Positions 53,280-60,452 of a stretch of 64,000 nt of DNA are shown piece after piece. The stretch covers positions 62,001 through 126,000 of the forward strand of contig CDMY01000295.1 of assembly GCA_001179505.1 (NCBI GenBank), in the 5' to 3' direction. The position numbers were made by a program, and so were the translations under genes. The notes under the pieces are model-generated. The model was not told where the DNA came from. It searched no databases and worked only from the letters and a program-made list of their open reading frames with translations. The first letter of the stretch is position 1. The number at the start of each line of letters is the position of its first letter. This DNA comes from Vitrella brassicaformis CCMP3155 (lineage: Eukaryota > Protista > Chromerida).

Positions 53280-55037
53280 CACTGACGCAGAGCAAGTAGA
53301 AGACGCTCACACAGGCTGTTGAGGGCTATCGACGAGTGGCGCAGATGCCGCGCCGCTTGATATCCGATTCTCGGTTGAGACGAATAAAGCCAAAGAAGGC
53401 GAGATTTTCGTCAGGGGTTCAGCCGTTGACGATGTGCTGTCGTGGTGTGTGGTCTGCCTGGCTTATCTTCATCTTCTTGCCGGACATCATCCTTCACCTC
53501 CTTTCCAGGTTACACGCATCTTGTCCTAAACCCACAGGATCGACGCCGGCAGAAACTCATGCCGAGGCTCAGGCGCAAGAGGGACTGCATTGCAAAGGAC
53601 GTGTGTGCTCGTAATGTGCGTTTTGTTGCGTTATGTTTTGTTTGGGCTTTTTGAGAGCAGCACTGGGTATCAGCAGCAAATTGCAGTGAATTGCAGATGA
53701 ATGGTTTACGCGTAGCACTCACTCACGTCCATAGGCACTGCAATGAGGGTCGTTGCGTGGTGTGCACCTATGTATGTAATCAAGTCCAGGCAGTCGTGCA
53801 TGCCATGCAGCCATACAGACAAGCAGGTGCTCGCGCACTCACATACAGTAGACACTCACATGCAATGCGTGCGTGCGTGCGGGGAAGTCAGCGTCGATGG
53901 ATGACCTGCGCTCTTAAAGAGGAAGAGAATAAACACCGACACCGCCACACACTCACGAGCAGACACACTGACCGACTCACAGAGATCCCCAAGCAGCCAG
54001 GGTCATGCAGCCGCGCACAGACAGACAGACAGACAGGCGTACTCACTCTTGCATACACAGATACATTGGGAGGGCACATATCCCTGAAAGTGTTGGTATG
54101 CATCGCATCTGGCACTCTCTCTAACTCTCTACTTACTTCGGCCAGCCCGGCTACTGCGTGCCCCCATGCAGCATAAGTATGTTATGTTGTGGACAGACAC
54201 CATGCACACGCAAACAGCGATCGATGTGTTTGTGCGGTCATATCCTTGCTGTCGAGAGGCCGGTTTTTGGTCTCACCAACGCCCTCGCGACACCGCCCTG
54301 CCCTATTTGGCGTCGCGTCGCGCTCAGTAAGTAGGCACCCTACACACAAACAGGGCAGACAGCAGACAGCAGACAGGACCGACGAGCACGAGCAGGCAGG
54401 CAGACACAGAGAAGAAATAAAACAACCAAAAAAAGCGACACCGACACACACGCAGGGCAGGGCAGGGCAGGGCAAACACAGCCAGACGAGCAGGCAGGCA
54501 CACAGGCGGACAGACAGACACGCGAAAAGATAAAGACACTGAAAAACCAAAGAAAGCGAGAGCGCCCTGTGCTGTGCTGTGTGTGGCCGGACCTTTGTTG
54601 TCCCAGCCGCCTAACCCTTTCAACCCAGATCAAACCTCCTGGGTACGCACATCTGTATGCACATCGCCCCCCCTCCCTCTCTCTCTCCCTCCCTCTACCA
54701 TGACAGCCATTCTCGTGTTAACGTGGACTCACTCAGCTCAGCTCAGCTCATCACCGTTCGTTGCGTCTGTCTACAGTGCCAACCAGCCAGGCCGGCCGCC
54801 AGCCCCCCCGCTATGCCATCGAGCCTCGTGTCCGTCTGATGAACTCATTCGCACCTACTGTACTGATCCACACATGTGACTAGAAGGAAGAAAACACGGC
54901 TACGAACGACGGACAGACGCACTCAGCCCACACCGACTTGACTTACAGCACCCATCCATCCATCCATCCATCCATCGCAGTCACTAGGCACGCTCGGACG
55001 GATGGACAAGGGAGGGAGGTATGGATCGCTCCATTCC

Positions 55038-56524
55038 TTACAACAGACGCATCAGCATCACGGCCGCCGCCAGGGAAGCGACAAGCGACGCCATGCCCGT
55101 CGCCCTCACTGCCGCTGCCCCGCTGCTCATGCCCCCGAACCCAAAACCCACACCATCACCACCACGACCCGCCGCCTGGCCAGCTGACACTACCAGGGGG
55201 TCTTCCCCTACACACACACACACACACACAGAGGGAGAGAGTGTCCATACGAAGGGGGAGGCATGCACCGACCAGCGTCAGCTGACCTCTTCTGAGGCTT
55301 GATGAGCTCGAGAAGAGCGTCTGCGGGGTGCCCGATCCGAAGTCGGCCAGGCCGACGAGGTCTGATGTGTTGGTGTCTGGGTCATGCTCGCATATGTAGC
55401 GCCGCCTGGTGCCCCGGCACGACTCGACGCCCCACAGGCCCGCTGCCTCGGTCGTTGACTCGTCACGCGGCTGCATCGCACCCACCACACCACCCACACC
55501 CACACACACACACACACAGAGGTGTATTAGGGAGGGAGAGACGGTTGCGCAGTCTGACCCACCTCAAAAACGGCGCAGTAGACGCCCATGTCGGTTTCCT
55601 TGTTGGCCTTTAGTGTGTCTACGTCGTGTGGGCCCCACTGCGTGGCCTCGAGGCTCGTGCCGTCCACTGCCACCCAACCATTCTGGGATGACATGTCCTG
55701 CATTGCATGCACCAAAGGGCACTGACAATCGGCGGAAGCGCGTTGTGCGCGTGCGAGAGACCTTTTGTATTGAGGGCTTTGCAGCGGCTGTCCTGTTGGA
55801 GCCCATGAGGCCGATCCAGTAGCGGTTGCCGAGGGTCCCGCCCATCGGCACCGCACACACGCCGCCATCACCGTCGCAAAACAGAGACAACACCGCCTCA
55901 TTCTCCTCCTGCACACATCCATCCATCCATCCACACACACACCCCCATCCACTGACCTTAGTGCCAACGGTGGCGAGGTGTCCGCCCTCCGCCTCGCAGG
56001 TGTCCTCTGCCTCCTGCCACTCCATTGGCTCGAACCCCAGCCTGTAGCACTTGCTGCCCGAGTTGAAGTACCCCTTGGGGCAGCCCTCGGCGTCGCCAGC
56101 AGCTGATGTGGCGAACCGGCCGGGGCAGGCAGCGGGGCCGGACACCACCTTCGGCAAGGCCGGGTGGGTGTAGGTGCTCACCTGATGGATGCATGGATGG
56201 ATGTGTGGTCATGTAAGAGGTGTCTTCTGGTGCGTACCAGTGCGGCTTTCTTTGAGATGGTGACCAGGTCGCTGGGTTGGAGTTCGGCTTTGGTGGCAGT
56301 GTCGGTGGCGGTGTCCGTGTCATTGCCTGTTTCTGTGGCACCGCTTCTCTTCATCATGTTGCAGGTGGCGTCCTGGAAGCCGTAGAGCTGGCACTCGCCC
56401 ATCTGCGCACACATCTGCTCGCACACCGACTCGCTGTCGGCCGCTATCTCCAGCAACGCCGCGCTCTCCTTCTGCATGACAACCACACCATATCAACATC
56501 AACCGATATACCATGGTGTGTCTG

Positions 56525-56555
<31 letters not shown>

Positions 56556-59223
56556 AGAGGCAGGCAGGCAGGCAGGTTGGCTTACGTCTTTGTGCAAAGC
56601 GCAGAGTGACTGTGTCCAGGTGAAGAGCTCGCACTGGCCATCCTCCTTGCATAGCTCCTGGCACTCTTGGGGGGTCTTGGCGGTGCTCACGGACTTGACG
56701 GGGTCGCCCTGGTACGCAAACCCGGTGTCCACACACGTGCCATCTGCACACACATGCAGAGAGACAGACAGACAGACAGAATGTGCGCAAGGCGGAAGGG
56801 GGAAGGAAAAGGCGGCCACGCCACTACCCCCCACTCACTGCATGATCTCGGTCCGGCGAAGAAGCCCTCCTTGGTAGCGACGTCCTTGACGTCCCACGAC
56901 TTGAGGTAGCACCCGCCCCACTTGGGCGCATACACCACGTGGAAACACGCGGGGTCGTCCGCACACAGGGCCTGGCAGGCCGCCGCGTCCTTGACCTCGG
57001 TGTTCTGCCCTCCCATGCCCGTAGCCTTGATCTCGGTGTCAGCCGACAGACAGGAATAATCTGAGCCCACCCATCCCATCAACACAACACACCTAGGGAC
57101 GGTTGGTGCGTGTGTGGTGTCACCAAACTGACCTTCCTCTTCCTCGGTGTCCTCGGGGGACCAGTTGCAGGCGACCTTAAGGGCGCCCTTCAGGTTCGGC
57201 TCCTCATTCTGATTCACCCAACACACACACACACACACACAAAGAGAGGAGAGAGAGACAGAGACAGGGTGTCGACAAAGCGTCCATCCCGAATTTTTCT
57301 GTACCGTGACGTTGGCGGGCGTTGCGGGCCACTGCTTGAGCGCACAGGTGGCCTGGAGCAGGTCGGAGGCGTTGTAGACATAGCCGCTGCAGAGCTCCTC
57401 TTGCTTGCACTTCTCCATGCAGTCGGCCCGGGAGGCGGAGGGCTGCTCGGTGATCGAGTCGAAGCGGTTGATGTCAAACCCGTCCCCAAGCTCCTCGAAA
57501 CACCAATCAACTGACACCATTCGCCCATCCATCCATCCATCCATCCAGTGCGCTGCGTGCATACCGCAGTATTTCTCGCCCGAGACGGGCGTCATGCCGT
57601 CGCCCCTGTCTTCGACTTTCTCCTCATCGACAGTAGAGGCAAACAGGTGACAGGCCCCGATGACCTCGGGCAGCTGTCTCCTTCGTACGCTGCCGGATTC
57701 GGTGTCCGTGTCCGTGTCGGCGTCAATGGCGTCAATGTCGAGATCGGCGACATCGGTTGTTCCCTCCGCCGTCACTTTGGCCTGTGGGACCCATGAGAAG
57801 TGGTCGCAGTGCTCGCTGGTCTGGCAGAGCTTGTGGCACTCGACCGCCGAGCTCGTCATGGCCGGCTTGTCGCCGCCCTCGCTCTCGCCCTTATACAGCA
57901 CCCCCTGCTTGAAACACGCTGTTTGTGCTGCATCCAGACGCACACACAGCACCGAGAGGGAGGGAAAGGCGTACTGTACTGTGTGTGTCGATGATGTGAT
58001 GCGGGCGGGAGACTGACTGGCATCGGTCAGTCGGCCGACTGACCTTCCTGGTCTTGTTCGGGCGTTTCCCTCTTGTGCATTGTGAATTCGATGTGTCCGT
58101 CTTTGACGTCCTTGCCGTCCACGGTGACGGTGTGGTTATTGAGCTTGTGGTTGACACCCTTGCGCACAAACTGCACACGGTTCAGGCTGATCGTGTAGTC
58201 ACCCACAATCCAACGGCCATCTGACAAACACTCGACACACACACACACAGAAAGTGTTGCCGGCCGTCCTGTCTGTCTGTGCCCGCGTGTGTCGCACCTT
58301 CCCAGGCCTCTGTGAAAGTGTCGAAGTGCTCCGTCCACTTGGGGGTGAATTTCTGCGCCAGCACGTCGTAGCTCTCCACCTTGACATAGTCCACAAAGGC
58401 GCTCGAGGGAAGGCACTTCATGTCGAACTTGCCGAACTCCTCAACGGCATTGGGGCCGGGCGACCACAGGCTAATATATAACTGCATGGGCCGTCTGAGC
58501 GACCGCACCAAGTCGGGGTGCTCCTCGACCGTCAGCTTCCGCACCGTCACGTTGTTGATGGCCCACACCACTCTGTCGGGGGTCCACTCTATTTGGTACC
58601 TCTGGTAGTCGGCGGGCTTGGCTGCGATGGTTTCGTTGACCAGATGGGCCCCCAACACGTTCTCTGGCTCGCGCCCGAGACCTGGCGGCATAGCAGCTGA
58701 ATGGTGAGTGGGTGGGTGGCTTGTGTGGTGACTTGTTGTGGTACCGATGATGAGGCTTGACAGTGCCTCGGGTGTCCCGTAGGCATTGTTGCCCTTGCCG
58801 AGCACGGCGAAATCAATCTCCTGCCTGAATGAACCAACACACACACAGACACAGACACAGACAGACACCGCTTTGCCCAGTGTCCCCTTTTCTCTCTCTC
58901 TTTGTCGCGGGCTCAGCTCAGCTCAGCTCAGCTCAGGTAATTGAGCTGACTGACCAGGGGTGCCTGGGGTGTGTGGAGTTGGGGTAGAAGAGGAAGAACG
59001 ACATTATCTGCCCGCTGCACGCCGGCGCCATCATCCTCACCTCGAAACGCCCGTACGAAAACGCCTCATCGGTGGCGATGGACCCCGCGCCCCACACCTT
59101 CTGGCACGTTCCCAGCGTCGTGTCGAAGAAGTACTCACCTCGCTCGTGCGAATACGGGCACTGTGCGTGGGCTGCCGCCAGAAGGGCGGCCAGCAGGCCG
59201 ACACGATTGGTTGCCACAACCAT
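55038..59223 (-). CDS. Secreted, probably GPI-anchored protein: signal peptide - GH16 (circularly permuted, EIDFA) - 5 PAN/Apple - C-type lectin - GPI signal
   Basis: MVVATNRVGLLAALLAAAHAQ signal peptide. GH16: FSYGRFEVRMMAPACSGQIMSFFLF...W|QEIDFAVLGK...YQIEWTPDRVVWAIN...LYISLWS...VDYVKV. Five C-x3-C-x5-C Apple cores (CHKLCQTSEHC, CMEKCKQEELC, CQALCADDPAC, CQELCKEDGQC, CEQMCAQMGEC). CTLD: CPKGY...KCYR...WQEAEDTCEAEGGHLAT...YWIGL...WGVESC...YICE. Hydrophobic tail SSGAAAVRATGMASLVASLAAAVMLMRLL*. Confidence 0.88.
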
Positions 59224-59408
59224 TAGTCGGTCACTGCGACTGGCGGCGGGAGTGTGCAGCTGCCGGGGTTCCTTAAGGGAGGGAATTGCTCGCCCAGCCC
59301 AGAGCTTCGCCTGTACTATAATTTCCGCCCAACGGCCGGGGGGCTGGTCGGGGGGCCAGGGCCGTCTCACTGTCACCTCGGCCGAATTCTGAGAGCACAC
59401 GGTTTGCA

Positions 59409-60042
59409 ATGTCCGTCAACGTGTTAAAGATAGTGCGTCGTGGCGGTGGCCCCGCCCCGCTGGTCAACAACCCCGGCAAGGGCCACTGCTGGATGCAGGT
59501 GGGCCTCAACGCACTCATCACGGCCGTCTCGGGGCTGGGCATCGTTGCCGCACAGTGGGAGAATGCCAACTGCGGCGAGGAGGCCACGAGGTACCTGATC
59601 ACCATGGGCATCATGGCGCTCTTTTCGGCTGCGTTTTTCATCCTGCTGGGGACGCAGGCGGCGAGCGACACCGAGTGGTCGTGTTATCTGATGGTGATGA
59701 TTGCTATCGGGATTGTGGAGGGGGTGGGCGGGGCCTGGGGCGTGTGGATCTGCTACCGGGTGTACTCGCGGAGACACTTCAAGGGCACTCGCGAACACAA
59801 CTGCTGGACATCGGTGGGGTCTGTCGCACTCTTGAGTGCCGCGCAGCCGTGTGTTTACTGTGTGGTTCTCTCTGGTTCTTGTCTTGTTTGTGTCCCTCCC
59901 TCAGCCCAAGACGCTGTATTATGTGATTCAGACGATGTGCCTGGTCCACATCTTCACGACGGTGTATGCCATCTACATAACGCACATCAGCTTTCTCGTC
60001 GAACTCATCAGACAAATGGGATCGCTCAAGGAAGTACGCTGA
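59409..60042 (+). CDS. Four-TM membrane protein, TMEM272-like pattern; 2 exons
   Basis: Exons 59409-59813 and 59905-60042 are in frame. Four hydrophobic segments with the Cys pattern ...ANC...RYLITMG...GVWIC...NCWTS|PKTLYY. The family assignment is inference. Confidence 0.7.
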
Positions 60043-60452
60043 CTGGACTGACTTCTGACTTCTGACTGCTCGAGAGGGAATCAACTAACGGACAGATGAG
60101 ATGGATGGATGACCGATGCTAAGACAACCACTCGCCGCTCCCCAGAACTCACTGCTCATGCAGAGAGGTAGGTGGGCGTCAATCAAAACTGTCAATGTGT
60201 GTGGGCACTGCACTCAACTCAATCAGAAAAACACGACAATCCAATCCTGGCCCCTTCCTTGCCGCGGTGCAATCGCGTTCACACATGTAATTTACATACA
60301 CCACACCCTGCCCTGGCTCGATAAGCTACCACACGCCCAGACACGGCAAACTCACACACGAAAAAACCACACCCACCCAGACGGTCAGACATGCCTGATG
60401 GATGGATGGATGATGGGCTGACCCTTTAAAGCGACGCTTAGTAGTGCTGATC

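What the first reader, a model, noticed from the sequence alone, without database searches (positions are those of the whole stretch)
55038..59223. GPI-anchored pseudo-glucanase/Apple/C-type-lectin mosaic: candidate glycan-sensing adhesin
Seen: the active-site motif reads W-Q-E-I-D-F-A-V-L-G-K (Glu at 58818-58820, Ala GCC at 58806-58808). It is followed by five Apple domains, one C-type lectin domain and a GPI-type tail. Known: GH16 uses E-x-D-x-E, where the first Glu is the nucleophile and the last is the acid/base, and losing the latter cripples hydrolysis. Non-catalytic GH16 proteins serve as beta-glucan pattern-recognition receptors in invertebrates. PAN/Apple arrays are apicomplexan microneme adhesins (MIC4 type). 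Inference: a multivalent surface receptor for beta-glucans (laminarin, host, prey or own wall) in a free-living relative of parasites. I know of no description of this architecture.
Basis: partly seen in the sequence, partly recalled or inferred. Interest (0 to 1): 0.85.

Follow-up and report, generated by a model that had tools for sequence, protein, structure and literature searches.

The report
Dead glucanase on algal surface protein
The alga Vitrella brassicaformis expresses a 15-exon gene for a probably lipid-anchored surface protein whose bacterial-type beta-glucanase head has lost its acid/base residue and several conserved cleft residues, so it is most likely a binding or scaffold protein and not an enzyme; the gene is already in public databases and similar fusions recur in this genome.

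Summary
Window 59223-55038 (minus strand) holds a 15-exon gene whose 1009-aa product equals Vitrella brassicaformis CEM00455.1 / A0A0G4ERN6.

- **Domains:** Pfam finds one GH16 domain, five PAN/Apple domains and one C-type lectin-like domain. The only hydrophobic segments are an N-terminal signal and a C-terminal GPI-signal-like tail.
- **Motif:** it reads WQEIDFAVLGK. Ala (GCC, 58808-58806) replaces the acid/base Glu found in 98% of 92 non-Vitrella homologs.
- **Reads:** two genomic runs and one cDNA contig show no other letter. One 3112-nt spliced contig joins all domains.

- The GH16 domain is a circularly permuted, Fibrobacter-type lichenase, not a laminarinase.
- It has also lost other conserved residues (E48S, Q111L, N113S, H143Q, W198E) and is the most divergent of 96 aligned homologs. 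Ancestral-type glucan binding is therefore doubtful.
- The lectin-like domain lacks the EPN and WND calcium/sugar motifs.
- No signalling part exists, so "sensor" is unsupported.

Vitrella has paralogs with intact motifs (P0014, P0031, P0029) and a second dead one (P0009, Thr). This scan's notes report similar GH16-Apple-lectin genes at other Vitrella loci. I read it as a non-catalytic surface binding protein of unknown ligand. Interest is moderate.

The parts
55038..59223 (-). Whole CDS, 15 exons, 1009 aa. Exons as high-low coordinates: 59223-58955, 58824-58745, 58681-58298, 58220-58044, 57927-57565, 57510-57305, 57208-57133, 57060-56839, 56743-56586, 56471-56238, 56181-55957, 55908-55762, 55697-55563, 55470-55287, 55207-55038.
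   Evidence: Manual GT..AG model gives an open frame. It is identical to P0001 = CEM00455.1. The spliced cDNA contig in X7 matches the junctions.
59164..59223 (-). Signal peptide, residues 1-20 (MVVATNRVGLLAALLAAAHA, then Q).
   Evidence: N-terminal hydrophobic segment. The cleavage site is inferred by eye; no predictor was available.
58044..59160 (-). GH16 domain, residues about 22-300, on exons 1-4. It has the circularly permuted lichenase fold.
   Evidence: Pfam PF00722, 65.5 bits. phmmer against PDB: 3axd, E 1.8e-25. AF2 model pLDDT 86.7. Foldseek top hits are Fibrobacter 1,3-1,4-beta-glucanase, TMt 0.85.
58806..58820 (-). Catalytic motif E92-I-D94-F-A96. The nucleophile Glu and the Asp are kept. 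The acid/base Glu is replaced by Ala (GCC, 58808-58806).
   Evidence: Aligns to E56/D58/E60 of the Fibrobacter enzyme. The column is Glu in 98% of homologs. No variant letters in reads.
58437..59082 (-). Span holding further lost conserved residues: S48 (59082-59080), L111 (58763-58761), S113 (58757-58755), Q143 (58604-58602), S187 (58472-58470), E198 (58439-58437).
   Evidence: Column conservation in alignment A1. Residue mapping. Alignment to 3axd residues E11, Q70, N72, H99, N139, W148.
57565..57927 (-). PAN/Apple 1 (exon 5), six Cys, with a long acidic insert.
   Evidence: Pfam on the exon and on P0001. Self-alignment A3.
57305..57510 (-). PAN/Apple 2 (exon 6, continuing into exon 7, 57208-57133).
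56839..57060 (-). PAN/Apple 3 (exon 8).
56586..56743 (-). PAN 4 (exon 9), short form.
56238..56471 (-). PAN 5 (exon 10), four-Cys core followed by a Thr/Asp-rich linker.
55384..56082 (-). C-type lectin-like domain, residues 757-921, on exons 11-14. DVD (55625-55617) stands where EPN would be. WGV (55434-55426) stands where WND would be.
   Evidence: Pfam Lectin_C, 36.7 bits. BLASTP and MAFFT against amphioxus and other CTLDs. Low-confidence AF2 model (pLDDT 58) whose Foldseek hits are nearly all CTLDs.
55909..55956 (-). Intron 11, 48 nt, in frame, with no stop. It is spliced out in the deposited model but retained in the X7 cDNA contig. Retention would insert VSGWGCVCGWMDGCVQ into the lectin-like domain.
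   Evidence: In one search the piece 55761-56179 equals record positions 2115-2533 without a gap. Translation.
55041..55103 (-). C-terminal hydrophobic tail, residues 989-1009. It is preceded by small residues (GMSSGAAA). This looks like a GPI-attachment signal.
   Evidence: Hydropathy scan. There is no cytoplasmic residue after it. GPI attachment itself is inferred.

Best explanation
This is an expressed Vitrella brassicaformis gene for a secreted, probably GPI-anchored, modular surface glycoprotein.

The membrane-distal head is a GH16 domain of the circularly permuted, Fibrobacter-type lichenase lineage. It has become a pseudoenzyme. The general acid/base Glu is Ala, and several other conserved residues are replaced. 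The fold, the nucleophile Glu92 and Asp94 are kept. Five PAN/Apple modules follow, and then a C-type lectin-like domain without the canonical calcium/sugar site.

I infer that the protein acts by binding, not by catalysis. It would be an adhesin or matrix/wall-organising protein. Its ligand contacts most likely lie in the Apple array, in a remodelled GH16 groove, or in both. The ligand is unknown and is probably not mixed-linkage glucan bound in the ancestral way.

The protein belongs to a Vitrella-specific family. Some members keep the catalytic triad (P0014, P0031, P0029). Others, fused to Apple modules and membrane anchors, have lost the acid/base residue (P0001 Ala, P0009 Thr).

Shown: gene model, transcript, domains, residue losses.
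Inferred: loss of hydrolysis, GPI anchoring, binding role.
For: - Gene model and identity to CEM00455.1.
- One spliced cDNA contig across all domains, and no variant at the Ala codon in X1, X3 or X7.
- Domains.
- Closest solved relative is Fibrobacter 1,3-1,4-beta-glucanase by sequence (E 1.8e-25) and by fold (TMt 0.85). E56/D58/E60 align to E92/D94/A96.
- Glu at this column in 98% of homologs. P0001 mismatches 14 of 40 columns that are at least 80% conserved, the worst of 96 (median 2).
- Longest terminal branch, 2.78 against a median of 0.65.
- Lectin-like domain lacks EPN and WND.
- Only N- and C-terminal hydrophobic segments.
- Paralogs with intact and with lost motifs.
- EXDX(X)E glutamates are the catalytic residues in GH16, and an inactive GH16 that lacks binding residues also fails to bind glucan: PMC4606783.
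Against: - No biochemical data exist.
- Glu92, Asp94, Trp90, Trp149 and Trp189 are retained. This could mean the groove is still under selection for a sugar ligand or for residual chemistry.
- GPI anchoring rests on inspection only.
- The cDNA contig retains intron 11, so the main protein isoform of the lectin-like domain is uncertain.
- My list of which Fibrobacter residues contact substrate comes from memory, not from a paper I could open.
Confidence: 0.6

Rival explanations
1. Beta-glucan-specific recognition protein. The dead GH16 head still binds beta-glucan (laminarin, mixed-linkage glucan or wall glucan). It would act as a lectin displayed on an Apple/lectin stalk, like invertebrate beta-glucan recognition proteins.
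For: The acid/base residue is lost while the nucleophile Glu, the Asp and three invariant Trp are kept. Non-catalytic GH16 domains in binding proteins are an established precedent (general knowledge). There are two membrane-attached paralogs with a dead motif.
Against: P0001 has also lost E48, Q111, N113, H143 and W198, which are 82-93% conserved in the family. It is the most degenerate member. An inactive GH16 that lacks binding residues did not bind laminarin (PMC4606783). The subfamily is lichenase-type, not laminarinase-type. P0009 keeps most of these residues and is the better candidate for this role.
Confidence: 0.2
2. Still an enzyme. Hydrolysis or transglycosylation proceeds with a relocated acid/base (for example the new Glu198 or Glu234), with an external base, or on a substrate with a good leaving group.
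For: The nucleophile Glu92 and Asp94 are conserved. New carboxylates appear at 198 and 234. Natural retaining glycosidases without the acid/base Glu exist, such as myrosinase (my own knowledge).
Against: Glu at this column is near-invariant (98%). Other conserved residues are lost as well. The branch is the longest in the tree. Acid/base mutants of lichenases are strongly impaired (Viladot et al. 1998, as cited in PMC4606783).
Confidence: 0.08
3. Decaying relic. The GH16 domain has no ligand and serves only as a folded spacer or cap. All function lies in the Apple and lectin-like modules.
For: Highest count of mismatches at conserved columns and the longest branch. No ortholog was found that would show conservation.
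Against: The frame is open across four exons. The fold is predicted with high confidence (pLDDT 86.7). The fold core residues and the E-x-D pair are kept. The gene is transcribed.
Confidence: 0.12

Closest known systems
Fibrobacter succinogenes 1,3-1,4-beta-D-glucanase (PDB 1MVE, 1ZM1, 3AXD), the naturally circularly permuted GH16 lichenase
   Same: Same chain order and jelly-roll fold (E 1.8e-25; Foldseek E 1e-23, TMt 0.85; about 30% identity). The W-x-E-x-D part of the motif is the same.
   Different: The acid/base Glu60 is Ala here. The residues that align to E11, Q70, N72, H99, N139 and W148 are replaced. This protein is eukaryotic, intron-bearing and fused to Apple and lectin-like modules.
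Vitrella paralogs: P0009 (CEM00815.1), P0014 (A0A7S1PDF3 / CEM17572.1), P0031 (CEM31690.1), P0029 (CEM35486.1)
   Same: Same permuted GH16 subfamily. All five form one clade in the best tree, with weak support (78.9). P0009 and P0014 also carry PAN domains. P0009 also lacks the acid/base residue (Thr).
   Different: P0014, P0031 and P0029 keep E-x-D-x-E. P0009 has a transmembrane helix with a cytoplasmic tail of about 210 aa, and Pfam detected no lectin-like domain in it. Only P0001 combines five PAN domains, a lectin-like domain and a GPI-like tail.
Invertebrate beta-1,3-glucan recognition proteins (betaGRP / GNBP / LGBP)
   Same: A GH16-like domain without catalytic residues sits in a secreted recognition protein.
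   Different: In those proteins the GH16-like domain is of the laminarinase type, and glucan binding is carried largely by a separate N-terminal module (my own knowledge). Pfam reported no such module in P0001.
Mycobacterium tuberculosis Rv0315, an inactive GH16 (PMC4606783)
   Same: A GH16 fold that has lost function through changes in groove residues, with no glucan binding detected.
   Different: Rv0315 keeps both catalytic Glu residues, is a laminarinase type and is a single-domain bacterial protein.
Apicomplexan Apple-domain microneme adhesins (TgMIC4, EtMIC5)
   Same: Tandem PAN/Apple modules in a secreted protein of the same wider lineage.
   Different: Those proteins consist of Apple domains only and travel through micronemes. 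No GH16 or lectin-like domain is fused. No orthology was detected.

Membership tests
GH16 (sequence and fold) | Match to PF00722 above the gathering score, and a beta-jelly-roll fold. | tested here: met
   65.5 bits against a cut-off of 22. AF2 pLDDT 86.7, and the top 50 Foldseek hits are all GH16.
GH16 (active enzyme) | E-x-D-x(x)-E motif with both the nucleophile and the acid/base Glu. | tested here: not met
   The motif reads E92-I-D94-F-A96-V. There is no Glu in either register.
Circularly permuted lichenase lineage (Fibrobacter type) | Colinear alignment over the whole domain with 1MVE/3AXD, and not with Bacillus-order lichenases. | tested here: met
   phmmer aligns residues 26-249 of the domain query (P0001:20-300) to 8-218 of 3axd. 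TMt is 0.81-0.87 to Fibrobacter entries against 0.54-0.58 to Bacillus lichenases.
PAN/Apple | Pfam PAN_1 / PAN_4 matches and the conserved Cys core. | tested here: met
   Five stretches, 91.6 and 81.9 bits. Three Cys are invariant across the five copies. Copies 1-3 have six Cys and copies 4-5 are shorter.
C-type lectin-like domain (fold) | Pfam Lectin_C above threshold, the WIGL motif and the conserved Cys framework. | tested here: met
   36.7 bits over model positions 2-106 of 107. Alignment A2. Foldseek hits are CTLDs, TMt 0.7-0.8, but the model pLDDT is only 58.
Calcium-dependent carbohydrate-binding C-type lectin | EPN or QPD motif plus WND, and the Glu before the conserved Cys. | tested here: not met
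   DVD replaces EPN. WGV replaces WND. The Glu/Asp of the N-E-D stretch ahead of the conserved Cys has no clear counterpart.
GPI-anchored protein | N-terminal signal peptide, a C-terminal hydrophobic tail with no cytoplasmic residues, and small residues at a possible attachment site. | tested here: inconclusive
   The sequence features are present. No predictor or experiment was available.
Invertebrate betaGRP/GNBP | N-terminal beta-1,3-glucan-binding module plus a laminarinase-type GH16-like domain. | tested here: not met
   Pfam shows no such N-terminal module. The GH16 domain is lichenase-type.

The most novel reading that the evidence does not exclude
Vitrella has turned a bacterial-type permuted lichenase into the non-catalytic recognition head of a family of Apple/lectin surface proteins. 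This would be a protist counterpart of animal beta-glucan recognition proteins. P0001 would be a member whose remodelled groove binds a new, non-glucan ligand, such as a coral, bacterial or own-wall glycan. It would show enzyme-to-adhesin conversion in the free-living stock from which apicomplexan adhesins arose.
Probability: 0.25. Interest if true: 0.55.

Novelty: new variant of a known kind. Interest (0 to 1): 0.4.

Why it matters
Chromerids are the free-living reference point for how apicomplexan parasites acquired their adhesive surface proteins.

This gene shows a bacterial-type glycan enzyme fused to Apple and lectin-like modules and then stripped of its catalytic residue. Intact paralogs survive in the same genome. 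That makes it a compact natural series for studying enzyme-to-binder conversion, and a source of testable candidate adhesins in Vitrella.

The significance is limited. Pseudo-GH16 domains, Apple arrays and enzyme-Apple fusions are each already known. The protein is lineage-specific and has no known ligand.

Tried and rejected
- **Word-based homolog searches.** Searches with the whole protein, with its GH16 region and with the GH16 region of P0009 returned essentially only the queries themselves. I could not retrieve the larger GH16-Apple-lectin genes that the scan's notes mention. No ortholog with the same architecture was found. This is a limit of sensitivity, not proof of absence.
- **Literature on Fibrobacter residues.** Searches for substrate-contact residues of the Fibrobacter enzyme found nothing readable. 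I relied on family conservation instead.
- **Literature on this protein.** Searches for a description of this protein or of GH16 in chromerids found none. The extracellular-domain table of Woo et al. 2015 lists PAN-APPLE but neither GH16 nor C-type lectin.
- **Lectin-like domain.** Its C-terminal half alone finds no solved relative by sequence. Its AF2 model is low-confidence in the long-loop region, so the loss of EPN and WND rests on sequence alignments.
- **Tree.** It cannot resolve whether Ala96 and Thr in P0009 are one loss or two. The pair are sisters with support of only 20, and both have long branches.
- **Rejected readings.** Sequencing error, RNA editing and separate transcripts are all rejected.
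Full report
**Observation**

The minus strand between 59223 and 55038 carries many short ORFs broken by stretches rich in (GT)n and TGGA repeats, as expected for a eukaryotic gene with introns. Joining fifteen exons at GT..AG sites gives an open 3030-nt reading frame.

Its 1009-aa product is identical to database protein P0001. P0001 is CEM00455.1 / UniProt A0A0G4ERN6 of Vitrella brassicaformis CCMP3155, labelled automatically as a 'GH16 domain-containing protein'.

Window 58823-58791 (minus) translates to QEIDFAVLGKG. Glu92 lies at 58820-58818 and Ala96 is GCC at 58808-58806.

**Read evidence**

I laid four public runs on 54900-59450.

- Two runs of genomic type from different studies (X1, X3) cover the codon and show no other letters. 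X1 may be the assembly's own source.
- Run X7, from a third study, holds one 3112-nt contig on the minus strand running from about 59166 to about 54947.
- Seven splice joints of that contig are listed explicitly, including the 63-nt intron 2 just downstream of the motif. The remaining junctions fit my exon lengths exactly by record arithmetic and by depth per bin.
- Run X12 has three further spliced contigs over the 3' half.

The Ala codon is therefore neither a sequencing error nor edited. All domains lie on one mRNA.

One deviation stands out. The 48-nt intron 11 (55956-55909) is the shortest intron in the gene. It is retained in the X7 contig, in frame and without a stop. Retention would insert 16 residues into the lectin-like domain. 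The first 57 nt of the CDS are not covered by that contig.

**Domains**

Pfam on P0001 gives the following (per-exon results):

- GH16 at residues 44-200, 65.5 bits.
- Five PAN stretches: PAN_1 at 91.6 bits and PAN_4 at 81.9 bits.
- Lectin_C at residues 775-920, 36.7 bits against a cut-off of 22.6.

Each PAN module sits on its own exon (5, 6, 8, 9, 10). Copies 1-3 have six Cys and copies 4-5 are shorter.

The only hydrophobic segments are residues 1-18 and 989-1009. The last one ends the protein and follows a run of small residues, which is the pattern of a GPI-attachment signal. GPI attachment itself remains an inference.

**What kind of GH16**

By sequence, the closest solved protein is the truncated Fibrobacter succinogenes 1,3-1,4-beta-D-glucanase (3AXD, 1MVE, 1ZM1), with E 1.8e-25 and a colinear alignment over the whole domain.

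I built an AF2 model from a 96-sequence alignment; it has pLDDT 86.7. Its best structural matches are the same entries, at E 1e-23 and TMt 0.81-0.87. Bacillus-order lichenases and laminarinases match much less well.

The domain is therefore a naturally circularly permuted lichenase type.

In the alignment, E56/D58/E60 of the Fibrobacter enzyme correspond to E92/D94/A96. The two glutamates of EXDX(X)E are the catalytic residues of GH16 (PMC4606783, which cites Viladot et al. 1998).

**How unusual is the loss**

An exhaustive profile-free search of 1.84 billion representative proteins with exon 2 to exon 3 found 134 relatives. The best hit other than the protein itself had only 35% identity.

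Nearly all relatives carry W-x-E-[ILV]-D-[IFV]-E. The exceptions are P0001 (Ala), P0009 (Thr), P0005 (Asp) and P0105 (Asn). In alignment A1 the acid/base column is Glu in 98% of the 92 non-Vitrella rows.

P0001 also departs at other conserved columns:

| P0001 residue | Family consensus | Conservation | Aligned Fibrobacter residue |
|---|---|---|---|
| S48 | E | 88% | E11 |
| L111 | Q | 82% | Q70 |
| S113 | N | 89% | N72 |
| Q143 | H | 85% | H99 |
| S187 | N | 92% | N139 |
| E198 | W | 93% | W148 |
| G266 | N | 95% | not mapped |

From memory, several of these Fibrobacter residues line the substrate groove. I could not open a paper to confirm this.

P0001 mismatches 14 of the 40 columns that are at least 80% conserved. 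This is the worst of all 96 sequences, whose median is 2. It also has the longest terminal branch in the tree, 2.78 against a median of 0.65.

The fold core, Trp90, Glu92, Asp94, Trp149 and Trp189 are kept.

**Paralogs**

Vitrella has at least four more members of this subfamily.

| Protein | Accession | Acid/base position | Architecture |
|---|---|---|---|
| P0009 | CEM00815.1 | Thr | 954 aa; GH16, PAN, transmembrane helix, cytoplasmic tail of about 210 aa. It keeps E48, N113, H143 and W198. |
| P0014 | A0A7S1PDF3 / CEM17572.1 | Glu (intact EIDIE) | GH16 plus two or three PAN domains |
| P0031 | CEM31690.1 | Glu (intact EIDFE) | GH16 only |
| P0029 | CEM35486.1 | Glu (intact EIDFE) | GH16 only |

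In the best tree the five Vitrella rows form one clade, and P0001 pairs with P0009. Support is weak (78.9 and 20) and both are long branches, so one loss or two cannot be decided.

No protein with the same full architecture was found elsewhere. The word-based searches are insensitive for such a divergent query.

The scan's own notes, which are unchecked, report further Vitrella loci with a permuted GH16 plus Apple, C-type lectin, SEA and membrane anchors. They also state that enzyme-Apple fusions are common in this genome. I verified this only for P0009 and P0014.

**Lectin-like domain**

The Cys framework and the WIGL motif are present. BLASTP and MAFFT alignments to six CTLDs that carry EPN and WND give a different picture for the sugar site:

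- DVD (residues 872-874) stands at the EPN position.
- WGV (residues 905-907) stands at the WND position.
- There is no clear counterpart for the acidic residue ahead of the conserved Cys.

The AF2 model is confident only in the N-terminal half (mean pLDDT 58). Its Foldseek hits are nevertheless almost all CTLDs. It is therefore a CTLD fold without the canonical calcium/sugar site.

**Interpretation**

Three things are shown. The gene is real and transcribed. It encodes a secreted mosaic protein with a terminal hydrophobic tail. Its GH16 head lacks the acid/base residue and several other conserved residues.

I infer that it does not hydrolyse glucans and works by binding. I cannot name the ligand.

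It is weakened by four findings: the subfamily assignment, the extra residue losses, the non-canonical lectin-like domain, and the absence of any signalling part. The inactive GH16 Rv0315 lacks binding residues and does not bind laminarin, so a GH16 fold alone does not imply glucan binding (PMC4606783). P0009 keeps most groove residues and is a better candidate for a glucan-binding pseudoenzyme.

The rivals cannot be excluded without biochemistry. They are a residual or re-wired enzyme, a retained glucan lectin, and a functionless relic.

**Novelty**

The protein is already deposited and labelled by domain. I found no paper describing it, or GH16 in chromerids. The curated chromerid extracellular-domain table of Woo et al. 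2015 lists PAN-APPLE but neither GH16 nor C-type lectin.

Each ingredient is known: pseudo-GH16, Apple arrays and CTLDs without sugar sites. The combination, and the intact/dead paralog series, form a new variant and not a new kind.

Noticed in passing
window 55909-55956 (minus strand): The shortest intron of the gene (48 nt, in frame, no stop) is retained in the only full-length cDNA contig (X7), while the deposited protein model splices it out. The two forms differ by 16 residues inside the lectin-like domain.
   Followed up: partly
window 55000-59300: Several marine sediment metagenome runs from 2023-2025 (X11, X13-X16) hold 8-38% of the sampled words of this Vitrella gene. This suggests Vitrella or a very close relative in sediments.
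   Followed up: no
window 56183-56208 and 58234-58251 (introns 10 and 3), and other introns: Intron microsatellites of (GT)n and TGGATGGA type break the genomic contigs of X1 and X3 and give many loose ends. They are dispersed repeats shared with many other loci.
   Followed up: no
window 57927-56238 (exons 5-10): Each PAN/Apple module lies on its own exon. Exons 5 and 8, and exons 6+7 taken together, begin and end in phase 1, which fits module duplication or shuffling.
   Followed up: partly
window 59409-60065 (plus strand): A divergently oriented ORF of 218 aa with hydrophobic stretches starts about 190 nt upstream of this gene's start codon. It may be a neighbouring membrane-protein gene sharing the intergenic region.
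   Followed up: no
P0125 (768 aa, Logan assembly, origin unknown): This relative of the same permuted GH16 subfamily carries a weak PAN match and a C-terminal GH10 domain. It is another enzyme-Apple-enzyme mosaic, possibly from a chromerid-like organism.
   Followed up: no
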